Virus record (IMG/VR): IMGVR_UViG_3300021520_000002
Location: 221,573-285,572 of that record
Length of the DNA: 64,000 nt
Direction: 5' to 3' (one strand)
The position numbers were made by a program, and so were the translations under genes. The notes beneath the pieces were generated by a model. It made no database searches and was not told the origin of the DNA. It was given only the letters and a program-made list of their open reading frames with translations. This document shows positions 533 to 64,000 of this stretch, piece by piece (position 1 is the stretch's first letter; each line of letters opens with the position of its first letter).

Positions 533-548
533 AGTTACTCCTTATGAT

Positions 549-580
549 ATCGGCAAGATCTATTGCTAAATCTTGCCGAT
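549..580. repeat. dispersed palindromic hairpin, copy 1
   Basis: ATCGGCAAGATCT-ATTGCT-AAATCTTGCCGAT just after the RNAP beta stop codon. Confidence 0.95.
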
Positions 581-584
581 ATTA

Positions 585-4478: not shown

Positions 4479-4503
4479 ATTTTTTCCTTTAAATAAAAAT
4501 TTT

Positions 4504-4535
4504 ATCGGCAAGATCTATTTCTAGATCCTGCCGAT
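4504..4535. repeat. dispersed palindromic hairpin, copy 2
   Basis: ATCGGCAAGATCT-ATTTCT-AGATCCTGCCGAT. Confidence 0.92.
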
Positions 4536-4539
4536 TTTC

Positions 4540-10481: not shown

Positions 10482-10556
10482 TGGTGCCCAAGGTGAGAAT
10501 TGAACTCACGACCTAGTGTTTTAGAGGCACTCGCTCTACAACTGAGCTACTTAGGC
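10482..10556 (-). tRNA. tRNA with CUA anticodon (amber suppressor type)
   Basis: GCCTAAG TA GCTC AGTTGTA GAGC G AGTGC CT-CTA-AA ACACT AGGTC GTGAG TTCAATT CTCAC CTTGGGC A CCA; encoded CCA; C31-A39 mismatch and no D-loop GG. Confidence 0.88.
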
Positions 10557-13846: not shown

Positions 13847-13875
13847 AGTATCTTTTTCTCCTAAAAAAATATTTT

Positions 13876-13908
13876 ATCGGCAAGATTCTATTATTAGATC
13901 TTGCCGAT
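13876..13908. repeat. dispersed palindromic hairpin, copy 3
   Basis: ATCGGCAAGAT...ATCTTGCCGAT just downstream of a promoter motif (13926). Confidence 0.9.
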
Positions 13909-13947
13909 ATTTATCAAATATATAATTTCTATATATAAATTGACATT

Positions 13948-15270: not shown

Positions 15271-15448
15271 TTATATTCTATTTTTTTCCATATCTATTAT
15301 AAGAGTTGTTAATCTTATTTTTTCTTCAGTTAAAAATTTTAAATTATTAGTTAAATAATTTTTATTATGATACTCTAATAAAGCAATTGCTTTAAGTACT
15401 TCTGCAATTTCTTGTATGCTTTTATATTCCATTATTCTTCTCCTTTTT

Positions 15449-15480
15449 ATCGGCAAGATCTATTGCTAAATCTTGCCGAT
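15449..15480. repeat. dispersed palindromic hairpin, copy 4
   Basis: identical to copy 1, just after the beta-prime C-terminal gene stop. Confidence 0.95.
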
Positions 15481-15487
15481 ATTTATT

Positions 15488-27387: not shown

Positions 27388-27473
27388 TAGGGGTGATAGC
27401 TTTTCCACTATCACCCTACTTTAAACAAATAAAAAACTGGCATTACGTTCTCGATATGAGTCGCGTAATGCCA
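27388..27473. terminator. pair of terminators at a convergent junction
   Basis: GGGTGATAG/CTATCACCC (+) and TGGCATTACG/CGTAATGCCA (-). Confidence 0.7.
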
Positions 27474-27556
27474 ATTTGTTTTGTTTTCTGTTGTAGCCCT
27501 TCTTCCCCTTTTTAGAGGTTTGAGGTCCACCATGTGAAGAGATATAAAGGACTTCC

Positions 27557-27772
27557 TCAACAATTCGCCGATGTTTCAGTTTCTTTTCTTTTTTCATAAT
27601 TATCCTCCATTATCATTTTACTTACAATTGCACATTTATGTTTTTGAACTAAACGAAATTCTTTATGAACTTCTTTGTGTATTTTAGTAGTTTTCTTTTT
27701 TTGAGAAAAACTAACATAAATAACTTTTGGTTTAGGAGTCCAATCTATTATTTCTTCCTCTTCTTCAATCAT
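27557..27772 (-). CDS. hypothetical protein
   Basis: own promoter motif (27808) and SD AGGGGG. Confidence 0.6.
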   Translation of the reverse strand: MIEEEEEIIDWTPKPKVIYVSFSQKKKTTKIHKEVHKEFRLVQKHKCAIVSKMIMEDNYEKRKETETSANC

Positions 27773-27909: not shown

Positions 27910-28122
27910 TTACATAGCTCTTACACAGGTTCCAGCCATTCCACAAACGGAACAGCTTATACCAAGTGAACATCTCGTTTTCTTTTTCGGACGAGTCTTG
28001 TGCAGAACGTCGTTGAAATATTTTCGAGATTTATGTTCAGTTTCAGCCGCTTTGTGTATTTCTACACTTAAAAAAGCGTTCTGAAGCTTACGAGCCAAAG
28101 TTGAATCTTGTAAAATTTGCAT
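27910..28122 (-). CDS. hypothetical basic protein with C-terminal Cys cluster
   Basis: promoter 28156, SD AGGAGGAG, CSLGISCSVCGMAGTC. Confidence 0.65.
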   Translation of the reverse strand: MQILQDSTLARKLQNAFLSVEIHKAAETEHKSRKYFNDVLHKTRPKKKTRCSLGISCSVCGMAGTCVRAM

Positions 28123-28184
28123 GTTCTCCTCCTAGAGTTTTTTGTTACTTTATTATTTCTATATGAAATCTTTAAAAATAAAAA

Positions 28185-28328
28185 CAAACAAAATTTTCAT
28201 ATGATACGAATATCACATGAAAATCTTGCCGGTAGAACAATTTCTTAAACCAGCAAGTGGTTCAGAACAGGAACATCTACAGCCTACTGTAGCGTCCTTC
28301 AACTAAAGGTTACCCTTTAATCTATACT
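28185..28328 (-). ncRNA. structured small RNA, paralog A
   Basis: promoter 28335, five hairpins, terminator; covaries with paralog B. Confidence 0.7.
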
Positions 28329-28369
28329 TATTAATTTCTATATGAAAAGCTTGAATATCAAAAAAAGAA

Positions 28370-28516
28370 AATAAACAAAGAACTTATGTGATATAAATAT
28401 CACATAAATCCTTCGCCAGTCGGAGCAAAACTTTTTTCCCGTGAGGGAATTAGTTAGGAGCATCCAAAGCTTTCTTTGGCGTCCCTTAGATATACATTAC
28501 TGTATATCTTACATTA
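28370..28516 (-). ncRNA. structured small RNA, paralog B
   Basis: promoter 28523, five hairpins, terminator; covaries with paralog A. Confidence 0.7.
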
Positions 28517-28569
28517 ATATAATTTCTATATTAAAATCGCAAATATCAAAAAAAGAAAAAAGGAGAAAA

Positions 28570-29073
28570 ATGAACGAGTTTGTACACAACAGTGTTAGAG
28601 ATTTATTTGTCAACAAATATTTAGTATCAAAAAAAGAAGAGAAGTTATTAATTATTGATATTGGAAGTTATGATGTAAATGGTAACATAAGAGATTTATT
28701 TGATGTAAGTAAGAAATGGGGTTATTTTGGAGTAGATATTGAAGCAGGTCCAAATGTTGATATTATTTTAAGAAATCAATATATATTTTATGAATTTGGA
28801 GATTATCAAGTAGATGTAGTTGTATCTTGTTGTACATTTGAACATATTGGTTTGTTTTGGTTAACTATGAAAGAAATAAGTAGAATTTTAAAAGTAGGTG
28901 GATATTGTTGTATTGTAGCTCCATTTGATTGGGAAGAACACAAACATCCAATTGATTGTTATAGATTTTATCCAGATGGATTTAAAGCTTTAGCTGAATG
29001 GTCTGGATTAAAAACTATTGAAACATCTACTATGGCTGATAAACATCATACAATTTTTATCGGCCAAAAATAG
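28570..29073 (+). CDS. class I SAM-dependent methyltransferase
   Basis: IIDIGSYDVNG, GVDIEAGPNVD, CTFEH, HPIDCYRF; start after AAGGAG. Confidence 0.88.
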   Translation: MNEFVHNSVRDLFVNKYLVSKKEEKLLIIDIGSYDVNGNIRDLFDVSKKWGYFGVDIEAGPNVDIILRNQYIFYEFGDYQVDVVVSCCTFEHIGLFWLTMKEISRILKVGGYCCIVAPFDWEEHKHPIDCYRFYPDGFKALAEWSGLKTIETSTMADKHHTIFIGQK

Positions 29074-34359: not shown

Positions 34360-34428
34360 AAAAACAAAAAGTGGGATCGCTCCAACTTTTTGCTAGATAG
34401 GGCTGTTATAGCTCAACTATCTACCTAT
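34360..34428 (-). ncRNA. candidate ~65-nt small RNA
   Basis: promoter 34433, hairpin TAGATAG/CTATCTA, terminator CAAAAAGT/ACTTTTTG plus U-tract, no ORF. Confidence 0.55.
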
Positions 34429-34462
34429 ATTATTTCTATATGAAATCTTTAAAAATAAAAAT

Positions 34463-38065: not shown

Positions 38066-38132
38066 AACTCCTCCTTTTATTTTTGATATTATATTATTTC
38101 TATATAAGATTGAAGAATAATAAAAAATAAAG

Positions 38133-38164
38133 ATCGGCAAGATCTATTGCTAAATCTTGCCGAT
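38133..38164. repeat. dispersed palindromic hairpin, copy 5
   Basis: identical to copy 1. Confidence 0.95.
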
Positions 38165-38373
38165 ATTTTTAATAGTCTATATACTCTTTTAACTGTCTAT
38201 TTCTATTAAAGGAACTTTCATCTGTATCTCTTACAAAAACATCATCATTTAAACGATTTAACGCGGCTTCACTAATACAATCATCAAATCTTGTTTTCAA
38301 CATTAAATCAACAACATCTTTGTACCCTTTTTTAGATTTCATTTAGTTCTCCTTTATTAGTTTTTTGCTGATA

Positions 38374-41300
38374 TCAAACTTTAGTATTAACTTTAAAACC
38401 TTTGATTTTCATCTTTCTACATTTTTCAAATACACCATTTAAATTATTATTTTTATTTTCTCTAATAATTTCAATAACATCACTATCAGGTAATAAATAT
38501 TGTAATGCTTCAATTGAAGCTACAACTAAATCTTTATCAGTTTCTTCAATTAATATTTCTTTCCAGAATTGAACAGCTCTTTCAATTCTATGATCAATAG
38601 GTTTAAATTTTCTACCTTTTAGCGGCATATGATTTGGATTTTCTTCTAATGAAAGCATAGGTAAATCATGAACATTTATTTTACCAGATGGACTTTTTTC
38701 AAACAATGAATGTACAAAATCACCAAAAGCATCTATAGGACTATATTCTTTTGATCTACTATCTCCTGGTGAAGGAATTATAACTGGTTCTATTTCATAA
38801 TCACTGATGCTATTTATAAAACTTCTTAACTTATATGTATCACATTCATCTTTCTTTGGACATATTTCACATTTTTCTATATCCATTTTATCCCTCCGTT
38901 AATTCATAAAATATTGAATGACAATTTGGACAACTGAATAGTTGTTTATTATCATATACTACATTCATACTTCTATAATCTAATTTACCGTGAGAGTATT
39001 GACCTCTACTTACTAATTCTATTAGTGGTTCTCCTTTCTCTTTACATACTGGACACTGAAATTTTTCTCTGTCCATTATTCCTCCTCTAATTCATCATGT
39101 GACGACTAAATAACATATCGTCAATTTTAATATTTTTAATTTTTCCATCTGACTTAAAAGTATAGTGTCTCTGATACTTTAACAGATCATTTTGAATGTA
39201 TTTTCCTTGTTCAGAAAGTGACATATTTTCAAATTTTCTTCTTTCCAGATCCATTCCTGTTTTGATTAAATCTTTAAAGTCCTCTTTTATAGGATTATAA
39301 CCAATTACAGTAACATATCTTTTGAATATTTTTTCAAGTTCTTCATCAGATTTTGCCGAATCAAATTGTCCAAGAATAATATAGAAGAAACTATTTAAAA
39401 AATTAAGATGGGATTTTCTCATTTTACTACAATCCAATCCACCTTCTTCTTCTAGTTTTATAAGTTGTTTAAGTCTTTTTTGATTCATTTTTTCTCCATT
39501 AATTTAAAAGCAACATAAACCCAACCAATAATGAAAACAATTATTCCAACAGGTATTAAAATATCATAAATTAATATTTTAGATGTTATAGCTACTATCT
39601 GTGTAATTATAATGATCGTTGTTATTATTGGAAGTATAAGCATTATTCTTCCTATCCATCTTTTCATTTTTTCTCCTTTAAGAAGCATATGCTAAATGTA
39701 ACCATGAATCTGATAAATATGGATTTGAAGTTCCTGATGTTCTTATAGCACTATATTTAGATGTATTTGCAACAGCAGCTGTATATACAACTGTATATGT
39801 ATATGAATAATATGTTTGCATTGAAGATCTATATCGATCTCCAGTGACTTCTCCATTTTCAATCACTCTATAATGAATATGACTACAATGAGGACATTTA
39901 ATTTCATGATTTCCATTTAATCCAAAATCAAGCTTAGCTATAAAATCTTTACCACAACCATGACAATATAGATCAGTTGGAACTATCATTATTTCTCCTT
40001 TTTATCGGCAAGATCTTTAAATTAGATCTTGCCGATATTGATTTATTCTCCTTGAACCATTACTACTTTAAGTAATCTTTCTAAAATCATACTTATATGT
40101 GAACCAATCGATAAATCATCTTCTGCTATTTCTTCAACTCGTAAACCATCACAATATACTACAAATTTTAGCTTTCTCCATTCAAATATAACTGATTCTT
40201 TATTAATAGCTATTATTGTTACAGATTCTGGATATGGTATACTTTTAATAACTAAAGTAATAATTTTTTCTGGTGTTCTGATCATTTATTTTTCTCCTTA
40301 CTGATGATTTTCCATAAATTCATGAATTGTATCTCTTGCTAAACTTAAAGCATCTGGATGTGCATCTCCAGAACTAATAACTAAATTTAATAAATCATAA
40401 ATTGGTTCTAATAATCCATTAATATCATTTAACAAATCAATTTTTTCCTCTGAACATTTTCCTTTTTGTTTTACTGGTACTACACCATCTGGTTTCATAT
40501 TATTTCTCCTTTTTACATTCTGTTATTATTGATAATTCTAAATTAAGTAGATCAATTTCAGTTCTAAGAGCGTATACTCTTATATCTGTTGATAATAAAT
40601 CATTATTTTTAATTGTTGTGATAAATTTTGACATTTTTTCTAATTCTGCTAATGTTTTCTCCATATGTTCCAGTGTCATTCTTCTTTCTCCTGTGGAATA
40701 TTTGGAAGTCTAAACCACTCTTTTCTTTCATCATTAGCAGACCACATTGTTCCGTCATCACATAACGCATAAACAATAATTCCTGGATAACGTTCTTTTG
40801 AATTTGGTATATGTACACAAAACATTTGTATTGGCTTTCTCATATTTTCTCCTTTTTATTAGTAAGATCTATTGCTAAATCTTGCCGATATTATTAATAA
40901 GTTCTAATAAACTCTAACATCTTATTTCCTGATTTAAAGCAAATACATGTTTTACTACCCATTGGTATTCTTCTATTAATTAAATACACAGGACATTTAT
41001 TATTACATGAACCATGTTCACTACAACAAATTTCAAACAATTCTTCAGCTAATTCATCATCTGTTATTTCTTCTTTCTTTATTACTTTCATTAAAAGATG
41101 TACCATTTTATTTCTCCTTATTCATAGAATTTTATTTTCTTCCAGTTCTTTTTTCTTTTTCCTATAAATGGTGGATCATATTGTTTTACAGCTTTATATT
41201 CAATTTCAATAACTTCTTGTTTAAGTTTAGTAGTATCTCCATCATGTTCAATATCTTTCTCCCTAATTCTTCTAACTATAACTTCTGGAGAAATTTCTAA

Positions 41301-41847: not shown

Positions 41848-41955
41848 CAAAAAGAGTCTGGATATGTTAACGCTCATATCCAGATTTCGTTAGTAAGTGT
41901 AATTGATTGTGCCTGATTCAATCAATTACAGTCGCTTAACGCTTCTTTCTATTAT
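41848..41955 (-). ncRNA. candidate ~105-nt small RNA
   Basis: promoter 41961, 12-bp TGTAATTGATTG/CAATCAATTACA stem, terminator TCTGGATATG/CATATCCAGA. Confidence 0.6.
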
Positions 41956-41984
41956 TATAATTTCTATATGAAATGTTTAAAAAC

Positions 41985-42050
41985 AAAAACAGAAATCCGG
42001 GTTGCCCCGAATTCCTGTTTCCATCAAATCAAATCACTGTTCTATATATT
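41985..42050 (-). ncRNA. candidate ~65-nt small RNA
   Basis: promoter 42058, terminator AAACAGGAATTCGGG-GCAA-CCCGGATTTCTGTTT. Confidence 0.55.
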
Positions 42051-42093
42051 ATTATAATTTCTATATGAAAAGCTTGAAAACAAAAAAAAGTTG

Positions 42094-42125
42094 ATCGGCA
42101 AGATCTATTGCTAAATCTTGCCGAT
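42094..42125. repeat. dispersed palindromic hairpin, copy 8
   Basis: identical to copy 1. Confidence 0.95.
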
Positions 42126-42131
42126 AATTAT

Positions 42132-42975: not shown

Positions 42976-45900
42976 ATGGCTGATCAAGTAACTCCGACTC
43001 AAGAACGTTATATTGATCCATATATGCAACGGATTTTCGATTTCGATACCGTTGATGCTAAAGTGTATTTATCTCGTGCAACAAACATGTTGCTTAAGTC
43101 CATTGGTAACAATCTAGTTCTCGATGGATTCGATATAGAAAATCCAACGATTACCTCAAACACAATCATATCAGTTGATGTTAATCCTGGACTAGCTATA
43201 CAAGATTATGTACTTTGTGAAAATTTAGCAGGAACTGGTGTTATACCAAAAGTAACATTGAGTATGGATGTTGCTGGTTTAACTGATACAACTGTTGGAT
43301 TAGCTCATATAGGGGTTTTTCTTGATTATCAATTTTTACATACTGTGAACAGGAATGATTTTGTATTAAGAATGTATCATGTACCAGCATCTGGATTTGG
43401 ATTAACTCCAGCTGGTTTCAGTGCACCAAGAAGTGCTACACTTATTGGTATTATATGTTATACAAAAGATCCTGTAACAGGATATGTAACATATGCATGG
43501 GTTCTTCCAGAATTAGTTGGTGGAGTACCTGATTATGAAAACTGGCCATCTCTATTAGCTGAGACTGTAACTTTTTATCTGAAAGGATGGAAAGAACATT
43601 ATCCTCATATCAATTTTCATGATCTGGTTAAATTTATAGGTGGATATGAAGGTTGGGTAAGTGGTCCAGATTCAGCAATTGATGAAAGTATTGCTGTTTT
43701 TGATGGTACAAGTGGTAAACTAATTAAGATGATTGAACGTAATGTAAGAGTTATTCCAGATTGTTCACTTGGAATCAATGTAGAAGTTCCTTGTGATAAT
43801 GTTCTTGGAACTGATGGTAATATATATCGGTGTAGAGTTTCACACACATCTGTCGATGAAGTTTTACCAACTAGTGAAGTTACAAATCTTGGTCAAGGGT
43901 ATCGTTGTAAATTAGCTCATACTGCAGCAGCTATTAATGAGCCAGGTGTTGGTGCTAATTGGGCAACTTATTGGACAGTAAAAATAAGTGTTGCTGGTCC
44001 AGCTTGGGTTTCTGGAACAGATTATATAATTACTGGAAATCGGCCGATAACTGGAAATTTTATTGATCCTGAAACATTACATGAAGAGTGGACAAAATAC
44101 TGGGATAGAAACTATGATAAATTAACAGCTGATGTTTGGACCGCTGGAAGACCTTATATAACAAATATGGATTCTATTATGGAGATGACTATCGGCAACT
44201 CAGAAGTTCATCTTAAAAAATATTGTGCAAATATAGAACCATATAGTGGTTTCGATACAAATTTTTGGAATGCAGAACGTCAATATCGTCCAGCTATGAT
44301 AACTGGTGATTTAGTAACTATGGGTTTTGATTATTCTTATGGTTATAATTGGATACATTGTGGACCTCCAAATACTATTATTGATAATATCATGGGGTGG
44401 GAACCATATAATGCTCTTATGATTTGGAATCATAAAACACAAGAGGCTTGGGATACATTTCCTGTTCAATATGGTATTGTATGTGAAAATCAAAATTATG
44501 CTACAAATTCATGGGTATTTCCAATAGCAATATCTGGTTGGCAAACTGAAGCTGGTCAGTCTGAAATTGAAGGACAAGATGGAGTTTGTTATCGTTGTAT
44601 TAAAGATCATACTTCAGATCCAACAAATAGGCCATTTAGTGGTGCTACACATAATGGGCCTGGTACAGTTTCAAATTTAGCTAATAGTCCTAATGTTGTT
44701 GGAGTTGGTACTCAATTTCTTTCAGATTTTTATATGAATCATACTATAGTAATTGACGGTGAATATCATTTTATTGCACATGTAACTGATGATACAAATC
44801 TTATCACAGGCATTCCATCTGAACTTGGTGATACATGGTCGACAACACCAATATCATTAGCCCACACCAATGTAGCATATGAAGTGTGTGATTGGAATGA
44901 ATTTTGGGCAAAAGGTGGTGGAGCTGGAATGAATCCTTGGGCTAATGGTAGATTTTATCAGTCCAGAGGAACTTCTAATAGTTTTATAAATATTGCTTTT
45001 CATGGTATATCCATGAGTTATGGTCAATTTGGTATGGGTCAGTTAAGACCCTTTTATGGTGAATGTAGATATATGGGTGGTTCTTATGCAAACACTCATT
45101 ATGGAGATGATACAGGCAACAAACCTCTTGGTTGGGGTTCTATGAGAGTTGCTATGTGTTTTATGGCTGAAAGTAATTTATATGAAGATGGTTGGGAAGG
45201 CAAACCAGGAACTATTCCTGTAACTGAAGGGACAGTTTATGGATTTTATGCTAAAGCATTTGATGGTGGAGCATTTAAATATTCTTTCTGGGGACAAAAT
45301 CAACTTTATATTGGTAAGACTGATACTTCTTATACTGGTCAACTAGCAGCAATATATGCAAAATATGAAAAATCTTGTCGATTAAATGAAACAATAATAG
45401 GTGTTTTTGCAGTAGCAGGAGATATTCCACAAGAGTTAGTAACACCAGCTAATGATTCAAATTTTTCTTGGAATCCAACAGATTGGGTAAATGATACTCT
45501 TGTAGAATGTGTATGTCATCCTGGTACTGAAGAAGTTCCACCACTTCCATGGCAACAAAGTTATCTTCGCTGTGTATCTTCTGCAGCTGGACAATATGGT
45601 CATTTACCAGCGGCAAATTTTCCAGTAGAAGGAATAACATTAGTTACTAATGGTGGATTAACATATAGATGTATAAGACCTTACACATCTACTTTAGATA
45701 CTGAACCTGGAGTTGGAGCAAGTTGGGCATCATATTGGGAGTTATTTCCTGATTGGGATATTGGTATAGATTATGTTTTTGGAGATTTTATAGTTAAAGG
45801 TTCTGTTAATGTATATAAATGTATATTAGCTCACACTTCAGCCGCTATTACGGAACCTGGAGTTGGTGCAAGTTGGTCTGTGTGTTGGAAATATGCTGGA

Positions 45901-48900
45901 GTTACAACAGTATCACCTTGGGTTGAATGGATAAGATATAATACAGGTGGATTTACATATATAACAACATTTTATGTTCAAGCATTAACACTAGGAACAA
46001 GTTGGCAGTTAAGATGTGGTACACAAATAATAGGAATAATAAATTCTACAGGAAGTTATGAAATTACTTGGGATGCAATATCTACAGGTGATTTTTCAAT
46101 TATTTCAAATAACGTTTCAACATTAGATATTTTACAACCATTATCATTAAAAGAAATTAATGAAGTTCCTGGTGCTAGTAGTGCTATAGCATTACAAGCT
46201 GTTGCTACTGATACAATAAATAGTTCACAAACTATATTTGGAGCAGTTTGCATAACAAACTCACATACTGAAAGAGGTATGAGATCAGCTGCTGTGCTTG
46301 GAATGACTACATGGTATGGAAGTAGATATGTTTTAGGAACAGATTCATCCACAGTTTTAGGAACAGATGGGGCAATATATGTATGTAAAATAACTCATAG
46401 ATCAAATGTGGGATATTTGTATGGTGGTTATAGTCACAATCAACCTTCTGCTGGTTTTTGGTGGGAAGATTTTTGGAGAGTTTTTATTAATATTTGGAAT
46501 ACTGGTTGGCATTATACTGTTGATACTTCTGTTATCGAATCTGGTGAAATTTATACATGTATATTAGAACATACTGCAGATTCAACTAGTGAACCAGGTG
46601 TTGGTCTTGATTGGGCATTATATTGGAGTGATGAAGGACCAGTTACCACATTACCGTGGGCAGCAAATACAGATTATGTTGCTAAATCTTATGAATGTAC
46701 AACAAAACACACTTCAACAGATGATGATAGACCAATAACTGGTATAAATTGGGCAACGTATTGGACATTAGATACTAGTGCATTTGCTACTGGTAACGTT
46801 TGGGTTAAAAATAGAAGATATGTAGATATAGGTCCAACAGTAATAACTGGACAACAAAGTATAGTTGACGTTCAACAAGAAGATGCATCACCAAGTGCTA
46901 ATACTGGGGATGATTGTACTGTAACTAGTTATTATGCAAATGCTATACCTGGTGGAAGAAGAGTATTTTCTTATTATGGTGGTGATCCCATATATATAGA
47001 TAGAGAAACAGCAGCTAACAGAGAAATTGATGCTGCGATTTTTGCCGATTATACATATCCAACAAGAGAAGCAATAGTTCAGTGTGGTGCTGTAACACAA
47101 TCCATAGATATTGGTGGTTCTCCGAATTATAATTCATATGGACATATTATTGGTACACTTGGATTAGTAACAAATACGTTTAACGGCAAATTATCTTTAT
47201 ATGGTCTTGAAGGAAGATGTGATGGTAAAGGATTAAATGTTAGCGCTTGGAATATTGGTGTATTTGGTATGGCTAATTGGACTAATCCAATTTATGATGA
47301 TAGTTTTGATGAAAATTATTATAAAGTTTTTACAACAGCTGATGTAGATGTAGTAGCTGATACAATAACTTTTATAGATGGACATGGGAAAGTAGATGGT
47401 GATATTGTTGAATTTACTGTTGAAGCTGGAACTTTACCTTTAGGTTTATCAATAGATTCAATTTATACAGTTTTAAATAGTACACCAACAACATTACAAG
47501 TTGGTTATGGTTCAACAGTTCTTCCACTTGTAAGTGTTGGTACAACTGGTCCTTTTAGAATGTATCTGGGAAGATCTGCACCAATGTTAACATATGGAGT
47601 TCAAAGTAGAACATATATGATTAATGATGATGGATCAGAATATTCAACTAACTTTAATAATAATTTTGCGATAAATACATGTTTTGCAGCTATGAAAGCT
47701 GTAGGTGGTTGGATGCAATATACTTTATCCGGTTATGATCCAATTATGTTAACATCTGGAGATTATGTTATAGGTACAGATTCAGATTATGTTTTAACTG
47801 GTGGTACTATTTATAGATGTAAGATAAATCATAAAGCTGGAGGAATGTTTGGTGATCAGGAAGCTCCTGGTCAAATGTTTGGATTTTTATATTGGAGTCC
47901 AGTGACAGATGCTTCTGGTCCAGTGACTGCTCCTGCTTGGTTAAAAGGTAAAGATTATAAAGCAAATTATTATAAATGTACAACAACACATACTTCATCA
48001 TATGATGATCGACCAGTAAATGGTGTAGATTGGGCAGGATATTGGACGAAAGAATATATTTATACACCCATGGGTGAAGATCATATTTGGTATGAAGGAA
48101 AAAGTTATAGAGGACAAGTAACAATGGCATATACTGGATTCCATGTGGATCAAGTTGGTGGTGGTGCCTTAGTTGTTAATGGAGTAACACCCGGTTCAGT
48201 AAATACTGGATGGGTGGAAGTTCGAGTTGATAGTGGTATCGGTTGGATACCTTATTGGTCAACAGGAGCTGTAGCAACAAGTGGAACTTCTGGAACAGGT
48301 GGAACATCAGGTACAAGTACAAGTGGTACTTCAGGTACAAGTACAAGTGGAAGTTCTGGAACAAGTACATCTGGTTCATCTGGAACAAGTACAAGTGGTA
48401 CTTCTGGAAGTAGTAGTGATATAGATTTAACTGAAGGTAATTGGTATCTTGGAACTGGTTGGAGTATAGGTAGTTTAATAAAAGTTTCAGCAACAAGTTC
48501 TGGAATGGCTTGGTCTAATGATCATGTTCCGACTATTGGAGAAACTTATACAGCCACAGTAGTGTGTGATTCATATGATGCTGGAGGTGGTCTTGGAATT
48601 TATTGGAACTATGGTGGGATATGTGGATCAAATGGTATAGCACTTCATGCTGGAACAAATACACGTACTGGAGTGGCAACATCAGGAAACACAGCTTTCT
48701 TCTTCCCACTTAATGATGCGTGTACAGCTACAATTTCACGTATTAATATAACAACAGGAACGAGTGGAAGTAGTGGAACATCTGGAACAAGTACATCTGG
48801 TTCATCTGGAACAAGTACAAGTGGAACATCTGGAACAAGTACAAGTGGAACTTCTGGAAGTAGTAGTAATGTATCTTTAGATGTAAGTAATTGGTTAACT

Positions 48901-49677
48901 GCTATTGGTTGGACTGCAGATGGTACTTATTTAACAAAAGCATCAGCAACTGGGTCTGAAATGACTTGGGCTAATGATCATATTGCAACTCCTGGACAAA
49001 CTTATACAGTAGAGGTTGTATGTGATTCATATAGTGCTGGAGGTGGTCTTGGAATTTATTGGAACTATGCAGGATTATGTGGTTCAAATGGTACACCACT
49101 TCATACTGGAACAAATACAGTTACTGGAGTGGCAACAGGAACAGTGTCACCACTTTTCTTCCCACTTAATGATGCGTGTACAGCTGTAATTTCACGTATC
49201 ACTATAACAGTTGGAACATCAGGCACAAGTGGAAGTAGTGGAACATCTGGAACAAGTACGAGTGGAACATCTGGAACAAGTACAAGTGGAACATCTGGAA
49301 CAAGTACAAGTGGAACTTCTGGTGCAGATTCAGTATCACTTGAAGCATCAAATTGGTTAGCTGGTGTTGGATGGACATATGGTACTACATTATCAAAAAC
49401 TGCAGGTGTTGAAGGTGATTTAATTTATGCTAATGATCATATAGCAAGTGCAGGATCTTCATATACAGTTACAGTTATTGCTGATTCATACACTACTGGT
49501 GAAAGTTTAGGTATTTATTGGAATCTTGGTGGATTATGTGGTGTGAATGGTAAACCACTTGTTGCTGGAACAAATTCAGCAACTGGAACAGCATCAACAA
49601 ATGGATCAGTATTATTTTTTCCATTCGGTACAGGATGCGCATGTGTAATTAGTTCAATTACAGTACATCAAAATTAA
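42976..49677 (+). CDS. giant tail-fibre/virion appendage protein (2233 aa)
   Basis: N-terminus paralogous to 50569 gene; multiple CBM5/12-like modules; three C-terminal beta modules joined by GTS linkers. Confidence 0.75.
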   Translation: MADQVTPTQERYIDPYMQRIFDFDTVDAKVYLSRATNMLLKSIGNNLVLDGFDIENPTITSNTIISVDVNPGLAIQDYVLCENLAGTGVIPKVTLSMDVAGLTDTTVGLAHIGVFLDYQFLHTVNRNDFVLRMYHVPASGFGLTPAGFSAPRSATLIGIICYTKDPVTGYVTYAWVLPELVGGVPDYENWPSLLAETVTFYLKGWKEHYPHINFHDLVKFIGGYEGWVSGPDSAIDESIAVFDGTSGKLIKMIERNVRVIPDCSLGINVEVPCDNVLGTDGNIYRCRVSHTSVDEVLPTSEVTNLGQGYRCKLAHTAAAINEPGVGANWATYWTVKISVAGPAWVSGTDYIITGNRPITGNFIDPETLHEEWTKYWDRNYDKLTADVWTAGRPYITNMDSIMEMTIGNSEVHLKKYCANIEPYSGFDTNFWNAERQYRPAMITGDLVTMGFDYSYGYNWIHCGPPNTIIDNIMGWEPYNALMIWNHKTQEAWDTFPVQYGIVCENQNYATNSWVFPIAISGWQTEAGQSEIEGQDGVCYRCIKDHTSDPTNRPFSGATHNGPGTVSNLANSPNVVGVGTQFLSDFYMNHTIVIDGEYHFIAHVTDDTNLITGIPSELGDTWSTTPISLAHTNVAYEVCDWNEFWAKGGGAGMNPWANGRFYQSRGTSNSFINIAFHGISMSYGQFGMGQLRPFYGECRYMGGSYANTHYGDDTGNKPLGWGSMRVAMCFMAESNLYEDGWEGKPGTIPVTEGTVYGFYAKAFDGGAFKYSFWGQNQLYIGKTDTSYTGQLAAIYAKYEKSCRLNETIIGVFAVAGDIPQELVTPANDSNFSWNPTDWVNDTLVECVCHPGTEEVPPLPWQQSYLRCVSSAAGQYGHLPAANFPVEGITLVTNGGLTYRCIRPYTSTLDTEPGVGASWASYWELFPDWDIGIDYVFGDFIVKGSVNVYKCILAHTSAAITEPGVGASWSVCWKYAGVTTVSPWVEWIRYNTGGFTYITTFYVQALTLGTSWQLRCGTQIIGIINSTGSYEITWDAISTGDFSIISNNVSTLDILQPLSLKEINEVPGASSAIALQAVATDTINSSQTIFGAVCITNSHTERGMRSAAVLGMTTWYGSRYVLGTDSSTVLGTDGAIYVCKITHRSNVGYLYGGYSHNQPSAGFWWEDFWRVFINIWNTGWHYTVDTSVIESGEIYTCILEHTADSTSEPGVGLDWALYWSDEGPVTTLPWAANTDYVAKSYECTTKHTSTDDDRPITGINWATYWTLDTSAFATGNVWVKNRRYVDIGPTVITGQQSIVDVQQEDASPSANTGDDCTVTSYYANAIPGGRRVFSYYGGDPIYIDRETAANREIDAAIFADYTYPTREAIVQCGAVTQSIDIGGSPNYNSYGHIIGTLGLVTNTFNGKLSLYGLEGRCDGKGLNVSAWNIGVFGMANWTNPIYDDSFDENYYKVFTTADVDVVADTITFIDGHGKVDGDIVEFTVEAGTLPLGLSIDSIYTVLNSTPTTLQVGYGSTVLPLVSVGTTGPFRMYLGRSAPMLTYGVQSRTYMINDDGSEYSTNFNNNFAINTCFAAMKAVGGWMQYTLSGYDPIMLTSGDYVIGTDSDYVLTGGTIYRCKINHKAGGMFGDQEAPGQMFGFLYWSPVTDASGPVTAPAWLKGKDYKANYYKCTTTHTSSYDDRPVNGVDWAGYWTKEYIYTPMGEDHIWYEGKSYRGQVTMAYTGFHVDQVGGGALVVNGVTPGSVNTGWVEVRVDSGIGWIPYWSTGAVATSGTSGTGGTSGTSTSGTSGTSTSGSSGTSTSGSSGTSTSGTSGSSSDIDLTEGNWYLGTGWSIGSLIKVSATSSGMAWSNDHVPTIGETYTATVVCDSYDAGGGLGIYWNYGGICGSNGIALHAGTNTRTGVATSGNTAFFFPLNDACTATISRINITTGTSGSSGTSGTSTSGSSGTSTSGTSGTSTSGTSGSSSNVSLDVSNWLTAIGWTADGTYLTKASATGSEMTWANDHIATPGQTYTVEVVCDSYSAGGGLGIYWNYAGLCGSNGTPLHTGTNTVTGVATGTVSPLFFPLNDACTAVISRITITVGTSGTSGSSGTSGTSTSGTSGTSTSGTSGTSTSGTSGADSVSLEASNWLAGVGWTYGTTLSKTAGVEGDLIYANDHIASAGSSYTVTVIADSYTTGESLGIYWNLGGLCGVNGKPLVAGTNSATGTASTNGSVLFFPFGTGCACVISSITVHQN

Positions 49678-49687
49678 AAAATAGAAT

Positions 49688-49719
49688 ATCGGCAAGATCT
49701 ATTTCTAGATCTTGCCGAT
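49688..49719. repeat. dispersed palindromic hairpin, copy 9
   Basis: ATCGGCAAGATCT-ATTTCT-AGATCTTGCCGAT after fibre stop. Confidence 0.95.
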
Positions 49720-49754
49720 TATTTTAAAAGAAAATGAAAAGAGAGGAAATATAA

Positions 49755-50540: not shown

Positions 50541-50568
50541 ATATTTAAAGAATTAAATGGAGGAAGGT

Positions 50569-53500
50569 ATGGCAGATCAAGCAACTCCAATTCAAGAACG
50601 ATATATTGATCCTTATATGCAAAGAATTTTTGATTATGACACTACAGATTCGAGAGTATTTATATCACGGGTAACAAATCTATTACTTAAATCTGTTGGG
50701 AATAATATTGTTTTATTCGGACTCGAGCCAATAAATTTAAGACCCACTATTTCAGATCCACCATCATCAATCATATCTGTAGATATCACTTCAGGATTAG
50801 CTATACAAGATTATGTACTTTGTGATAATTTATCTGGAGTTGGGATTGAACCTAATATAACTTTAACTATGGATGTTGCAGGATTAGATGATACAACTGT
50901 TGGTGGTGCATATCTTGGAATTTGGATAAATTATCAATTTTTAGAATCAATGGAATCTAATCCTTTTATTTTAAAAATGTATCATGTAAATTCTGATGGT
51001 TCTGGGGTGAATCCAGCTGGATTTGATCCATTAAAAAATTGTACATTAGTTGCAATTTTAGGTTTTACAAAAATAGGTGGTGTTGTTACTGACGTGTGGA
51101 GTTTACCAGCAGTAGTTGATTATCAACATTGGCCTACTTTATTAGTTGGTTCAACAACTTATTATTTAAGAGGTTGGGAAAATTCAAATCTTAATACTAA
51201 TGAAATTATAAGATATGTATGTGGTGAAGAAGGATATGTTAAAGGTCCAGATATAGTAGTTGATGGAAGTATAGCTTTATTCGATGGAACAACAGGTCAA
51301 ATTATTAAAGACAGTGGGTTAACTCCAGTTTTTGGAGATGTATATGGACCAACAGGTTCTACAACAGGACATATTGCTATATTTGATGATAACACTGGTA
51401 AATTATTAGCTGATGGTGGATTAGTACCAGATGGAGATGTGATCGGTCCTAGTTCATCTGTTACTGGAAATTTAGCTATTTTTGGAGATACATCAGGAAA
51501 GTTAATTTCAGATGGTGGTTCAATACCAACTGGAGATGTAGTTGGTCCAATGGGATCAGTTGCAGGACACTTGGCAGTATTTGATGATGTAACAGGTAAA
51601 GTAATTTCAGATGGTGGACCAGTTCCAGTTAGTGTTGGAGATGTGGTTGGACCAGTAGGTGGAGCAGATGATAGTCATTTAGTTTTATTTGATGGATTAA
51701 CTGGAAAATTGATTAAAGATGGTGGTCCAGTTCCATCTGGTTTAGGAGATGTTATTGGTCCTACAGGTTGTACTCCAGGAAATTTAGCTGTATTTAATGA
51801 TGCGACTGGTAAGATATTAGCTGATGGTGGATCATTACCTATTTTTGGTGATGTTGTTGGTCCTGCATCATCTAGTGATGGTAATTTAGTTTTATTTGAT
51901 GGAATATCTGGTAAATTAGTTAAAGATGGTGGTGCAATGCCAATTGGAGATGTAGTTGGACCAGCGGCAGCAACCCCAGGAAATTTAGCTGTATTTAGTG
52001 ATATAACTGGTAAAGTATTAGTTGATGGTGGAGCATTACCAGTTAGTCTTGGAGATGTGGTTGGACCTGGTGTGGCTATTAGTGATCATATTGTTTTATT
52101 TAGTGGAACAACTGGTAAACTAATAAAAGATGGTGGAGCACTACCAGCTGGTTTAGGAGATGTAGTTGGACCAGCAACTGCTATATCAGGACATTTAGCT
52201 GTATTTAGTGGAACAACTGGTAAATTAATAGTTGATGGTGGGGCTGTACCATCTGGTTTAACTAGACTTATACCAGATCAATCTGCTGGTGTTCTTCCTG
52301 CAAGTACTGTTCGAGGAACTGATGGACTTTATTATCGTTGTAGGGTCGCACATTCAGCTCTTGCCGCTAATCGGCCGATAACTGGTGCTGCATTAGATAC
52401 AATAACTCTTAAACCTGAATGGAAAAAGTATTGGGATGTTGATTCATCTCTTACAACAGCTCCAACTTGGGTTTCTGGAACATATTATGTAACAAATATG
52501 GATTCAATTTTTGATTTAACTACTGGAAATACTTTTATTCATTTAAAGAAATATGGTGCAACTATTGATCCATATAATACTTTCTGTTCAACATTTTATG
52601 ATGGTTCAGATGATATACATACTAAGTTAGTTGTTGGTGATATAAATATTCTGGGAACTAATAGAAGTTATAATTATACATTTATTCATCTTGGTCCACA
52701 TTCAAATAAAGATAATGTTGAAGATGTTTATAAAGGTGACACAGGATTAATGGTTTGGAATCATCCTGATCCAACAAAATTAGAAGATTGGTTTCGTTGG
52801 TATCAGAGTGGTATAATAGTTGAAAATCAAAATTATACAACAGTACAATATCACCAAAATTTTGGTTTACAAGCTTGGTCTACAGAAGCTGGTCAGTCTG
52901 AAGTTAAAGGAACTGATAATAATGAAACTGGTTATAGATGTATTTTAACACATGTTGCTGCAACAAATAATAGACCAACTACTGGTACATATTGGGCAAC
53001 ATATTGGGAAGTTGGTGGTGGGTGTGGTCAAAATCAGTGGGTTTCAGGAACAACATATCAAGCTAAAGGAACTGCTCGTGGAGATTCTTATGGTGTTTAT
53101 GGTATGGCCGCTGGTTATGGTACAGAAGGAAATTATACAGGTGTATTAGGTGATTCTTGGTATCTTGGTGGTTCATATGCATATCCAAAAGGTGTATATA
53201 CTGCTCCTGAAGTAAATGGTTGGAATGCTAATAGAATGGCCATAGGTGTTGCTGGTAGAACTAGAATTTATCAAGATGGTTGGGAAGCTCATGATGGAAC
53301 AGTTCCAGTAACTACAGGTTCTATGTATGCATTTTACGCTCACGCCGCTATTGGTGGACAATATAAATATTCTTTTTATGGTAAAGATCAACTTTATATA
53401 GAAAAAACTTATGAAGCGGTTTATCCACAGAATTCAGCAATATATAGTGTTTATCAATCAAACTTTTCAGCTTCATCAGAAAATTCAAGTATATCAGGAT

Positions 53501-58942: not shown

Positions 58943-58986
58943 AAAGAAGTTTGTTTTAAATTTAATTAGAGGGAGGTCCTTCAACT

Positions 58987-61900: not shown

Positions 61901-64000
61901 CATCAGGTTCTGATGGAACATCTGGTAGTTCTGGAACTTCAGGTTCTGATGGTACTTCAGGTTCTAGCGGTAGTAGTGGAACAAGTGGTAGTAGTGGAAC
62001 AAGTGGTAGTAGTGGAACAAGTGGTATAGATGGAACATCAGGGTCTAGTGGAACTTCAGGAAGTTCTGGAACTAGTGGAACTTCAGGTTCTGATGGAACA
62101 AGTGGCACGTCTGGTACAAGTGGTATAGATGGTACGTCTGGAACTTCAGGTTCTAATGGTACTTCAGGGTCTTCTGGAACAAGTGGAAGTTCTGGAACAA
62201 GTGGTTCATCTGGTACAAGTGGTTCATCTGGTACAAGTGGAACTTCAGGTACATCTGGTTCTGATGGTTCTTCTGGTACATCTGGTACATCTGGTAGTAG
62301 TGGAACAAGTGGGTCGAGTGGAACATCAGGAAGTTCAGGTACAAGTGGTTCTGATGGAACGTCTGGAACTTCAGGTTCTGATGGCACATCAGGTAGTTCT
62401 GGTACAAGCGGTATAGATGGATCATCTGGAACTTCAGGTTCTGATGGAACTTCTGGGTCTTCTGGAACAAGTGGGTCGAGTGGAACATCTGGTAGTTCTG
62501 GTACATCTGGAAGTTCTGGTACAAGTGGTATAGATGGAACGTCTGGTACTTCAGGGTCTTCTGGAACAAGTGGAAGCTCTGGAACATCTGGAAGTTCTGG
62601 TACAAGTGGTATAGATGGAACGTCTGGAACTTCAGGTTCTAATGGTACTTCAGGGTCTTCTGGAACAAGTGGAAGCTCTGGAACATCTGGAAGTTCTGGT
62701 ACAAGTGGTATAGATGGAACGTCTGGAACTTCAGGTTCTGATGGAACTTCTGGGTCTTCTGGAACAAGTGGGTCGAGTGGAACATCTGGTAGTTCTGGTT
62801 CATCTGGAAGTTCTGGTACAAGTGGTATAGATGGTACGTCTGGAACTTCAGGTTCTAATGGTACTTCAGGGTCTTCTGGAACAAGTGGAAGCTCTGGAAC
62901 ATCTGGAAGTTCTGGTACATCTGGAACTTCAGGTTCTGATGGAACCTCTGGGTCTTCTGGAACAAGTGGTGAAGGGACAGCTGGAACCTCTGGAAGTTCT
63001 GGAACATCTGGAGTAAGTGGAAGTTCTGGAAGTGATTATTTTTATCAATCTGGTAATGGTGATGATGGATATAGATATTCAAATAGTTTTGATAATACAT
63101 CATTATATGTTCAATTAGGAAAAGGCACTTCTAATGGTACCAGTGCATTTTTTAGATTTGTAAATGTGACAATTCCAAAAGGAGCAATAATATTATCTGC
63201 AATTTTAACTCTCACATCAACAACTGATGATTCATCTGACTTTATGCATTTAGATTATTTTTTTAATGATGCTGATGATGCAATTGCTCCTACGAATATT
63301 ACAGAACTTGATAATTTAGCTAAAACAACGAATATTCGTCAATGGGATTTTGATCATTTTGTAACAGATCAATCTTATGATTCTCCAGAACTTAAGACTA
63401 TTCTTCAAACAGTTATTAATAGAAATGGTTGGGAATCTGGTAATGCAGTAATAATAATGATGAATGATATTTCAAGTTCAGCAAATGCTGGAAGAAAAGT
63501 TTATTCGATTAGAGATGAAGAAGGTTATCAACCTGAATTATATGTATATTGGTATATGCCTTCTACAAGTGGAACCTCTGGAAGTTCAGGTACAAGTGGT
63601 ATTGGAACATCAGGTTCTGATGGAACCTCTGGAAGTTCTGGAACAAGTGGTAGTAGTGGAACGTCAGGAGCAGCTGGAGCGCCAGGTACATCTGGAACTT
63701 CAGGTTCTGATGGAACCTCTGGAAGTTCTGGAACAAGTGGTAGTAGTGGAACGTCAGGAGCAGCTGGAGCGCCAGGTACATCTGGAACTTCAGGTTCTGA
63801 TGGAACAAGTGGAACTTCAGGATCTGATGGAACTTCAGGATCTTCAGGAACATCTGGAGGGACTGGAACATCAGGAAGTTCTGGAACAAGTGGTAGTAGT
63901 GGAACGTCAGGAGCAGCTGGAGCGCCAGGTACATCTGGAACTTCAGGTTCTGATGGAACCTCTGGAAGTTCTGGAACAAGTGGTAGTAGTGGAACGTCAG
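58987..64000 (+). CDS. giant Gly-Ser/Thr triplet fibre protein, 3-prime truncated by window (at least 1671 codons; absent from ORF track)
   Basis: SD GGGAGG then [30 protein letters not shown], paralogous to 55603; CBM5/12-like module near 61564-61735; DNRLRE/CBM96-like domain near 63035-63560. Confidence 0.85.
59401..64000 (+). repeat. 9-bp-periodic low-complexity repeat encoding [12 protein letters not shown] triplets, with near-exact 90-bp duplications after 63619
   Basis: directly visible. Confidence 0.9.

What the first reader, a model, noticed from the sequence alone, without database searches (positions are those of the whole stretch)
28185..28530. Two tandem paralogous ~145-nt structured RNAs with covariation
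Seen (- strand): each unit has its own promoter motif and the same five-hairpin order. H1 with GTAA loop (TAAAGG/CCTTTA vs AGATATACA/TGTATATCT). H2 AAGGACG-CTACAG-TAGG-CTGTAG-ATGTTCCT vs AAGGGACG-CCAAAG-AAAG-CTTTGG-ATGCTCCT, with conserved bulged base and compensatory stem changes. H3 TTC..GAA. H4 TTGYT..GGCRA. Then a terminator ATGTGATA/TATCAYAT with U-tract. No SD or ORF inside. Inference: a phage ncRNA family under selection for structure, possibly a protein decoy or antitoxin mimic. I do not recognise it as a known family.
Basis: partly seen in the sequence, partly recalled or inferred. Interest (0 to 1): 0.85.

Follow-up and report, generated by a model that had tools for sequence, protein, structure and literature searches.

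The report
New jumbo-phage small structured RNA family
Two neighbouring ~150-base genes in an uncultivated giant phage encode a previously undescribed, strongly folded small RNA that related phages also carry, and what it does is still unknown.

Summary
On the minus strand of a 450-nt divergent intergenic region lie two ~150-nt units, A (about 28518-28367) and B (about 28330-28180). Each has the phage's own promoter motif (ATATAGAAAT), hairpins H1-H3, a conserved 13-16-nt segment and an intrinsic terminator. Fold z-scores are -7.3 and -6.2.

The window is the last 64 kb of a 285-kb uncultivated jumbo phage with split multisubunit RNA polymerase genes. A covariance model built from the two units finds single-copy homologues at syntenic sites in related metagenomic phages: L015 (E 4e-24), L014 (E 5e-9) and four weaker ones.

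In 4-7 sequences, 95% of pair cells are standard, against about 45% in slid controls. Between 32 and 44 of 50 pairs change on both sides. H4 is better read as a sequence-conserved, probably unpaired segment (UGCUCC(G)ACYGGC).

No Rfam family matches, and GenBank phages hold no close relative. This is a real, new structured small-RNA family, probably an early transcript. My best guess is a trans-acting RNA that works through the conserved segment. The decoy or antitoxin-mimic idea has no direct support.

The parts
28522..28548 (-). Promoter of unit A: phage-wide motif (TTTTAATATAGAAAT) with upstream TGATATT
   Evidence: The same motif precedes many genes of the window and every homologue of the RNA.
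28367..28518 (-). Unit A RNA, about 150 nt. Both ends are inferred from the promoter and the U-tract, not mapped.
   Evidence: CM score 151 bits (the model was built from this sequence).
28488..28509 (-). A-H1: 9-bp hairpin with a GUAA (GNRA) loop
   Evidence: Seven of 9 pairs (4 sequences) and 8 of 9 pairs (7 sequences) change on both sides.
28456..28485 (-). A-H2: 12-bp hairpin with two bulges and an AAAG loop. The GG:CC pairs at its base are invariant.
   Evidence: Pairs 33-81 and 34-80 are G-C in all 7 sequences.
28429..28455 (-). A-H3: nested hairpin, 4 bp outer and 5 bp inner
   Evidence: Almost every pair differs between homologues.
28413..28428 (-). It is the most sequence-conserved part and is probably unpaired.
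   Evidence: 73-93% identity between homologues; no compensatory change; left unpaired in most folds.
28364..28412 (-). A intrinsic terminator: 15-20-bp stem, UUUA loop and U-rich tail
   Evidence: The lower stem covaries.
28334..28360 (-). Promoter of unit B (TGATATTCAAGCTTTTCATATAGAAAT)
28180..28330 (-). Unit B RNA, about 150 nt, ends inferred. H1 28301-28322, H2 28269-28298, H3 28242-28267, conserved segment 28226-28240, terminator 28192-28225.
   Evidence: blastn against the L015 homologue gives 71% over 187 nt.
28155..28181 (-). Third copy of the promoter, driving the downstream 70-aa gene. This shows that the RNA units are not that gene's only leader.
27910..28122 (-). Downstream gene: a 70-aa protein with a Cys-rich C-terminus, an SD and its own promoter. 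No family match.
28570..29073 (+). Divergent neighbour: a 167-aa SAM-dependent methyltransferase. It bounds the intergenic region.

Best explanation
Units A and B are two anciently duplicated genes for one family of about 150-nt, non-coding, highly structured small RNAs. The family belongs to an uncultivated clade of jumbo phages that carry their own multisubunit RNA polymerase.

Each gene is a complete transcription unit. It has the phage's nearly invariant AT-rich promoter motif (inferred to be the early promoter read by a phage RNA polymerase), about 150 nt of RNA, and a strong intrinsic terminator. A fresh promoter for the next gene follows immediately.

The RNA consists of:
- a 5' hairpin capped by a GNRA loop (H1)
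- a second hairpin with an invariant GG:CC base (H2)
- a third nested hairpin (H3)
- a sequence-conserved, probably single-stranded C-rich segment (UGYUC...CC..G)
- the terminator hairpin

Inferred mechanism: the RNA accumulates early in infection and acts in trans. H1-H3 give stability and shape. The conserved unpaired segment just before the terminator is the working site, which either pairs with purine-rich target RNA or is held by a protein.

What is shown: the anatomy, strand, conservation, covariation and absence of coding potential. What is inferred: early timing, action in trans and the role of the conserved segment.
For: Anatomy and fold significance:
-.

Nature of the phage:
- It has split beta and beta' genes on a 285,572-bp contig.

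Promoter:
- The motif occurs 22 times exactly, all before non-structural genes or small RNA units. One copy lies directly before an RNAP beta gene, and none lies in the structural block 42976-64000.
- This fits the published rule that jumbo-phage early promoters are about 10-nt AT-rich motifs centred near -10 and read by the virion RNAP (PMC7598289).

Homologues, all with the same promoter and a terminator:
- L015 E 4e-24; blastn 71% over 187 nt.
- L014 E 5e-9.
- L023, L026, L024 and L025 at E 7e-7 to 8e-6 with model R2.
- Five of the six lie next to the same thioredoxin and 57x-aa genes.

Covariation:
- Four sequences: 95.4% of cells paired against 37-46% in slid controls, and 32/50 pairs changed on both sides.
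- Seven sequences: 95.7% against 41-46%, and 44/50 pairs.
- An alignment made without the structure gives 26/44 compensatory pairs.

Strand:
- 21 of 196 pair cells are G.U. 187 cells are canonical on the minus strand against 168 on the other strand.

The conserved segment:
- It is the most conserved region and is unpaired in most MFE and consensus folds.

Independence from the downstream gene:
- A full promoter follows the terminator in every phage, and the downstream gene differs between phages.

Specificity of the model:
- 97 kb of unrelated bacterial DNA gave no hit at E<=0.01.
Against: - There is no expression data. The transcript ends, the timing and the promoter class are inferred by analogy with phiKZ and AR9-type phages. 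Those phages are only about 25% identical in RNAP.
- Only four sequences are secure homologues. The four remote ones score about the same as one clear false positive, L025:14789-14905. The alignments used for counting were fitted to the model.
- A duplex-energy search against translation-initiation regions gave no target shared between phages.
- Five conserved helices are more than a simple base-pairing sRNA needs, which leans towards a protein-bound or architectural RNA.
- Unit B has an alternative H3/H4 fold that is 6.4 kcal/mol better than the family fold.
Confidence: 0.55

Rival explanations
1. A protein-bound or self-associating architectural RNA, such as a decoy for a host RNA-binding or defence protein, or an oligomeric RNP. 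In this reading the helices are the functional part. The GNRA loop of H1 would dock on the invariant GG:CC pairs of H2 in another copy, including A-B heteromers.
For: - All helices are kept by covariation over deep divergence.
- Spacings are identical in A and B: 12, 15 and 38 nt between landmarks.
- The H1 loop is GNRA in 6 of the 7 sequences of alignment A5, and by eye also in L025 and in the candidate L022.
- The H2 base is invariantly GG:CC. GNRA loops are known to dock on tandem C:G pairs; this rests on established knowledge and was not tested here.
- Two long-maintained paralogues are as far from each other as from the L015 copy.
Against: - No partner protein is consistently encoded next to the RNA.
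- There are no complementary loop pairs of the pRNA type (by inspection).
- Tertiary or intermolecular contacts cannot be tested with these tools.
- L026 lacks the GNRA loop.
Confidence: 0.25
2. A cis-acting leader or attenuator. The units would be 5'-UTR elements whose terminators tune read-through into the downstream gene, like the 5'-UTR-derived sRNAs of phage 201phi2-1.
For: - The units have the same orientation as the downstream small genes and lie directly upstream of them.
- Eight of the 11 sRNAs in 201phi2-1 arise by premature termination in 5' UTRs (PMC11512511).
Against: - In every phage, a complete promoter sits between the terminator and the next gene.
- The downstream gene is not conserved. 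It is a 70-aa Cys-rich protein, or a 92-, 73-, 134-, 132- or 121-aa protein, or an RNAP beta' piece.
- No conserved alternative (antiterminator) pairing with the terminator arm was seen.
Confidence: 0.1
3. A DNA-level element, such as an origin, protein-binding palindromes or promoter/terminator cassettes. The RNA folds would then be incidental.
For: - The region is a divergent intergenic region with repeated AT-rich motifs and inverted repeats.
Against: - 11% of pair cells are G.U, which would be A.C mismatches in DNA or on the other strand.
- The fold is clearly better on the minus strand.
- Compensatory changes keep RNA pairs while the sequences diverge to 45-60% identity.
Confidence: 0.04
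4. A diverged member of an already described RNA class, such as a type III antitoxin, pRNA, Y RNA, a riboswitch or a ribozyme.
For: - The tandem repetition, the phage origin and the strong structure recall ToxI-like antitoxins and phi29 pRNA.
Against: - There is no Rfam hit at gathering thresholds. Below them only noise appears, namely miRNA or snoRNA models at E 0.2-7 on the terminator hairpins. This holds for the window and for two homologues.
- Each unit is 188 nt with its own promoter and terminator, not 34-36-nt repeats under one promoter.
- There is no ToxN-like or defence gene nearby.
Confidence: 0.04

Closest known systems
Small RNAs of chimalliviruses (201phi2-1 sRNA005, phiKZ sRNA upstream of gp182) found by ONT-cappable-seq (PMC11512511)
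   Same: They are short transcription units in jumbo phages that have their own multisubunit RNAPs, defined by a promoter followed closely by a terminator. Position and 2D structure are conserved between related phages. Function is unknown.
   Different: The phage lineage is unrelated (best RNAP identity to cultured jumbo phages is about 25%). These are stand-alone intergenic genes followed by a new promoter, not 5'-UTR-derived. There are two paralogues.
Base-pairing sRNAs with C-rich unpaired motifs (RsaE / RNAIII type) and Hfq-type sRNAs (own knowledge)
   Same: There is an independent promoter, a Rho-independent terminator with a U tail, and a conserved unpaired C-rich stretch (CUCC / CCCC) next to the terminator that could pair with GGAG-type ribosome-binding sites.
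   Different: Three further helices are conserved by covariation, which is unusual for such sRNAs. No conserved target was found, and the host and its chaperones are unknown.
phi29 pRNA (Rfam RF00044)
   Same: It is a phage-encoded, early-transcribed, highly structured RNA of about 120-170 nt.
   Different: There is no Rfam match, no three-way junction and no complementary inter-molecular loops. The phage type is different.
Type III antitoxin RNAs (ToxI) and phage pseudo-ToxI
   Same: They are tandemly repeated structured RNA in a phage.
   Different: The repeat unit is 188 nt rather than about 36 nt. Each copy has its own promoter and terminator. No endoribonuclease toxin gene is adjacent. 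The stems covary freely, so no fixed sequence is being mimicked.
T4 small stable RNAs C and D (own knowledge)
   Same: They are small stable phage RNAs of unknown function encoded among early or middle genes.
   Different: The T4 RNAs lie in the tRNA cluster and are processed from a precursor. The RNAs here have their own promoter and terminator. No similarity was tested.

Membership tests
Any Rfam 15 family | Covariance-model score at or above the family's gathering threshold | tested here: not met
   (whole window: only one tRNA elsewhere). (E up to 10: only miRNA, snoRNA or sRNA noise of 14-22 bits against thresholds of 43-117). (homologues in L015 and L023: nothing).
Jumbo-phage early transcription unit | About 10-nt highly conserved AT-rich motif centred near -10, repeated before early operons (PMC7598289) | tested here: met
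   ATATAGAAAT occurs 22 times exactly, and 70 times with up to 1 mismatch against 28.6 expected. It precedes non-structural genes including RNAP beta and is absent from the structural block. It is conserved in related phages. The timing and the polymerase that reads it are not testable here.
Independent small-RNA gene | Own promoter, own intrinsic terminator, no conserved ORF or SD | tested here: met
   The only internal ATG ORF (41 codons, unit A) lacks an SD and is absent from unit B and L015.
Structured RNA under selection | Helices kept by compensatory changes in homologues | tested here: met
   for H1, H2, H3 and the terminator. Not met for H4: 0 of 5 pairs compensatory in the four secure sequences.
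Base-pairing (seed-type) sRNA | Conserved unpaired seed with conserved complementary target sites | tested here: inconclusive
   A seed-like conserved unpaired segment is present. No target is shared between phages in the DNA held. Host genomes are unknown.
Type III toxin-antitoxin antitoxin (ToxI-like) | Short (~36 nt) tandem repeats under one promoter, directly followed by a ToxN/AbiQ-type endoribonuclease gene | tested here: not met
   The units are 188 nt, each with a promoter and a terminator. The neighbours have no toxin or defence family hit.
Riboswitch / transcription attenuator | Aptamer plus expression platform controlling the next ORF with no promoter in between, and mutually exclusive terminator/antiterminator pairings | tested here: not met
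   A complete promoter follows each terminator in all phages. No conserved antiterminator was seen. Ligand binding is not testable.
phi29-type pRNA | Three-way junction and complementary loops for ring formation, in a phi29-like podovirus | tested here: not met
   There is no RF00044 hit. The RNA is a linear series of hairpins in a jumbo phage.
RNA anti-CRISPR (repeat mimic) | Sequence and structure mimicry of the host's CRISPR repeat | not testable with these tools
   The host is unknown. Freely covarying stems argue against mimicry of a fixed repeat sequence. The resemblance of unit B H2 to a Cas12a handle (CUAC...GUAGAU) is not shared by unit A or the homologues (sequence reading).

The most novel reading that the evidence does not exclude
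The family is not a simple riboregulator. It would be the RNA core of a new phage RNP or a self-assembling RNA. The GNRA loop of H1 would dock on the invariant GG:CC receptor of H2 in another copy, including A-B heteromers. The phage would make it in the first minutes of infection to capture a host factor, such as a defence nuclease, a ribosome-associated protein or an RNA chaperone. The evidence here does not exclude this. It would explain why five structural modules, exact spacings and two old paralogues are all maintained.
Probability: 0.2. Interest if true: 0.8.

Novelty: new member of a known kind. Interest (0 to 1): 0.55.

Why it matters
Small RNAs of jumbo phages have been seen in transcriptomes, but almost none has comparative support or a known role. 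This family has clear boundaries and a phage-specific promoter. It has strong covariation, a sharply conserved candidate working site, and two long-maintained paralogues in a clade known only from metagenomes.

It gives a concrete, testable handle on RNA-based functions in early infection by giant phages. It is also a ready candidate for Rfam. The same genomes carry several other promoter-plus-terminator mini-genes, so the clade may run a sizeable small-RNA programme.

Tried and rejected
1. Known RNA family: Rfam at gathering and permissive thresholds, on the window and on two homologues. Nothing found.
2. Close relatives by DNA or protein in GenBank phages: none. The best RNAP hits are about 25% identical.
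3. IMG/VR scans with RNA patterns (H2 core, promoter plus conserved segment, promoter variant, remote motif): only the source contig and chance hits, which the model rejected.
4. GTDB genomes, by protein and by DNA pattern: no relative.
5. Strain variation: seven further assemblies of the same phage are 100% identical across the RNA region, so they carry no information.
6. Closest relative phage (76-80% protein identity, same 482-nt gap): its DNA is not on file.
7. Target search by duplex energy against translation-initiation regions: no target shared across phages.
8. Partner protein: the neighbouring small proteins differ between phages.
9. TAG recoding suggested by a run of TAG-only stops at 59852-63014: rejected. 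Another frame is open for more than 5 kb there, so the pattern is an off-frame by-product.
10. The R2 hit at L025:14789-14905 is a false positive. It has no promoter and is a gene end plus terminator.
11. The Cas12a-handle resemblance of unit B H2 is not conserved in the family.

Full report
WHAT IS THERE

The finding lies in a 450-nt region between two divergent genes. One is a 70-aa gene on the minus strand (ATG at 28122). The other is a 167-aa SAM-methyltransferase gene on the plus strand (ATG at 28570).

Read on the minus strand, the region holds two consecutive units of the same design:
- a 14-15-nt AT-rich motif ending in ATATAGAAAT (28531-28522 and 28343-28334)
- an 11-12-nt leader ending in GUA
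- hairpin H1 (9 bp, GUAA loop)
- hairpin H2 (12 bp with two bulged bases; loops AAAG and UAGG)
- a nested hairpin H3
- a 15-16-nt segment, UUGCUCCGACUGGCGA in A and UUGUUCUACCGGCAA in B
- a long AU-rich hairpin followed by a U-rich tail

A third copy of the motif (28164-28155) then drives the 70-aa gene.

IS IT MORE THAN CHANCE

- Each unit folds far better than shuffled controls on the minus strand: -47.8 and -48.8 kcal/mol, z -7.3 and -6.2, with 0 of 200 shuffles as good. The plus strand folds worse.
- A consensus scan calls both terminators, 3 sites in 900 nt against 0.5 expected.
- The decamer ATATAGAAAT occurs 22 times exactly in the window, and 70 times with one mismatch allowed against 28.6 expected. 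Repeat families D6 and D12 show that it is the core of a longer conserved promoter-like block.

WHAT GENOME THIS IS

- The window is the last 64 kb of IMG/VR contig UViG_3300021520_000002, which is 285,572 bp.
- It has 27% G+C and encodes split beta and beta' subunits of a multisubunit RNA polymerase.
- It also encodes repeat-rich giant proteins, a collagen-like fibre protein and many small ORFs. It is therefore an uncultivated jumbo phage.
- GenBank phages hold no close relative. The best RNAP matches are about 25% identical, to phiR1-37 and YerA41.
- Exact promoter motifs lie before non-structural genes, including the RNAP beta gene at 2555. None lies in the structural block from 42976 onwards.
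- A review of jumbo-phage RNAPs states that each such phage has an AT-rich, highly conserved motif of about 10 nt centred near -10 of its early genes, read by the virion RNAP (PMC7598289).
- By that analogy the two RNAs are early transcripts. This is an inference, not a measurement.

HOMOLOGUES

Searches by DNA and by the two flanking proteins found only the same phage. Seven other assemblies of it are 100% identical over the region.

I therefore went through the RNAP beta' N-terminal piece, which has 134 relatives in the protein collection, and fetched contigs with conserved gene order.

A covariance model built from units A and B (R1) found these:
- L015:2912-3050, E 4e-24. blastn independently gives 71% identity over 187 nt to unit B.
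- L014:588-721, E 5e-9 with filters off.

A second model built from these four (R2) gave four more hits:
- L023:2401-2555, E 7e-7
- L026:10249-10394, E 1.6e-6
- L024:3763-3910, E 5e-6
- L025:1744-1882, E 8e-6

Every one of these is preceded by the same promoter, often two in tandem with an ATTCAA box. Each ends in a strong terminator and is followed by another promoter. Five of the six sit in the same neighbourhood as in the window, upstream of a convergent thioredoxin gene and a conserved 57x-aa protein. L026 carries its copy between the two beta' genes.

Two caveats apply. R2 also gave one hit of similar score that is clearly false (L025:14789-14905, no promoter). The four remote members therefore rest on score plus promoter, synteny and shared motifs. 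On the other side, 97 kb of unrelated bacterial DNA gave no hit at E<=0.01.

The closest relative phage (76-80% protein identity) has the same gene order and a 482-nt gap, but its DNA is not on file.

STRUCTURE AND COVARIATION

- On the four secure sequences, 95.4% of pair cells are standard pairs, against 37-46% when the 3' partners are slid by 1-3 columns. 32 of 50 pairs change on both sides, and 0 of 500 shuffles reach any measure.
- With seven sequences the figures are 95.7% against 41-46%, and 44 of 50 pairs.
- These alignments were fitted to the model, so I also ran MAFFT plus RNAalifold with no structural input. It recovers H1, H2, H3 and the terminator, with 26 of 44 predicted pairs compensatory.
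- It does not predict H4. In the four secure sequences H4 shows no compensatory change, yet it is the most sequence-conserved region, at 73-93% identity.
- In most single-sequence folds the segment is unpaired between H3 and the terminator.
- The remote members carry a related C-rich motif (GYUCG.CCCCG). In three of the four it sits in the same place, between H3 and the terminator; in L025 it lies in the apical loop of a long hairpin.
- Other invariants are the GNRA loop of H1 (6 of the 7 sequences in alignment A5, and by eye also in L025 and the candidate L022) and two G-C pairs at the base of H2 (7 of 7).
- 21 of 196 pair cells are G.U. 187 cells are canonical on the minus strand against 168 on the other, which fixes the strand and rules out a DNA cruciform.
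- No ORF is conserved. The 41-codon ORF of unit A has no SD and has 4 codons in unit B.

THE TWO COPIES

A and B are 60% identical. That is no closer than either is to the L015 copy, at 56% and 60%. The duplication is therefore old and both copies have been kept. All other phages examined have one copy. Unit B can also form an alternative 9-bp helix between the H3 loop and the conserved segment. That fold is 6.4 kcal/mol better than the family fold, and unit A cannot form it.

HOW IT MOST LIKELY WORKS

Shown:
- These are stand-alone small-RNA genes, not leaders. A full promoter always follows the terminator, and the downstream gene differs between phages.

Inferred:
- They are transcribed early by a phage polymerase and accumulate because of the 5' hairpin and the strong terminator.
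- They act in trans through the conserved unpaired C-rich segment next to the terminator, either by pairing with purine-rich RNA or by binding a protein.

A duplex-energy scan found no target shared across phages. No partner protein is consistently adjacent. No toxin or defence gene is near. The depth of helix conservation, the exact spacings and the GNRA plus GG:CC invariants keep a protein-bound or self-associating RNA as a serious rival.

COMPARISON WITH WHAT IS KNOWN

- No Rfam family matches the window or the homologues.
- The nearest described things are the sRNAs of 201phi2-1 and phiKZ, defined by a promoter followed closely by a terminator. Their function is also unknown (PMC11512511; PMC13282480).
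- The family works like an independent sRNA gene. It fails the defining features of type III antitoxins, pRNA and riboswitch leaders.
- A text search for the promoter and motif strings found nothing relevant.

VERDICT

This is a real and well-supported new family of structured small RNAs in an uncultivated jumbo-phage clade: a new member of a known kind, with its function open. The decoy or antitoxin idea has no direct support.

Noticed in passing
window 41850-42066 (-), 34365-34441 (-); L039 (another part of the same genome); L015:2385-2520; L024:2860-2975; L025:720-840: There are further mini-genes of the same design: phage promoter, 60-135 nt with hairpins, no SD or ORF, then a terminator and another promoter. 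They are unrelated in sequence to the A/B family. The clade seems to encode a whole set of small RNAs.
   Followed up: partly
window 538-583, 4493-4538, 13872-13914, 15438-15483, 38122-38167, 39993-40038, 40847-40892, 42083-42128, 49677-49722: A nearly identical 32-nt palindromic hairpin (ATCGGCAAGAT...ATCTTGCCGAT) is repeated 9 times between genes, often between a stop codon and the next SD and without a U-tract on the sense strand. Similar ATCGGCAAGA/ATCGGCGAGA hairpins occur in L024 and L025. Unit B shares 11 nt (CGGCAAGATTT) with its arm. It could be a conserved termination or processing signal.
   Followed up: partly
window 10482-10556 (-): A tRNA with a CUA (amber-reading) anticodon, 66 bits in Rfam, which ARAGORN labels tRNA-Pyl. 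I found no evidence of TAG recoding in the window: TAG ends 15 of 87 long ORFs.
   Followed up: partly
window 58966-64000 (+): One reading frame stays open for more than 5 kb to the end of the contig, in a stretch of 43-45% G+C against 27% elsewhere. A neighbouring frame has only TAG stops for 3 kb, which looks like recoding but is an off-frame by-product.
   Followed up: partly
window 27910-28122 (-); L015:2597-2782 (+): Small proteins next to the RNA share a Cys motif (C-x3-5-C-x2-C-x2-A-G-x-C). It sits at the C-terminus in the window and at the N-terminus in L015. There is no family match.
   Followed up: no
window 27421-27597 (-); L014:337-549 (+): A very basic 58-70-aa protein (HGGPQTSKKGKKGY...) is conserved near the RNA locus in two phages. 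It could bind nucleic acid.
   Followed up: no
window 28226-28260 (-): Unit B alone can pair its H3 loop and 3' arm with the conserved segment (CUUGCUGGU/ACCGGCAAG, 9 bp). This hides the segment, so the two paralogues may differ in activity.
   Followed up: partly
L014:7534-8889, L024:13056-13742, L027:14891-15709, L027:5120-5773: HNH or LAGLIDADG homing-endonuclease genes sit beside or between the RNA polymerase subunit genes in relatives, and the split points of beta' differ between phages.
   Followed up: no
window 42976-49677, 50557-54879, 55603-58107 (+): Giant repeat-rich proteins of 2233 and 1440 aa carry CBM_5_12 modules. An 834-aa collagen-repeat protein ends in an endosialidase-chaperone (Peptidase_S74) domain. 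These are probably host-recognition fibres.
   Followed up: no
promoters of the RNA genes in all phages (e.g. window 28345-28360; L023:2370-2385; L026:10215-10230): The promoters of this RNA family often carry an extra ATATTCAA box about 9 nt upstream of the core motif. A second complete promoter often lies about 40 nt upstream, which may mean especially strong or differently timed expression.
   Followed up: no
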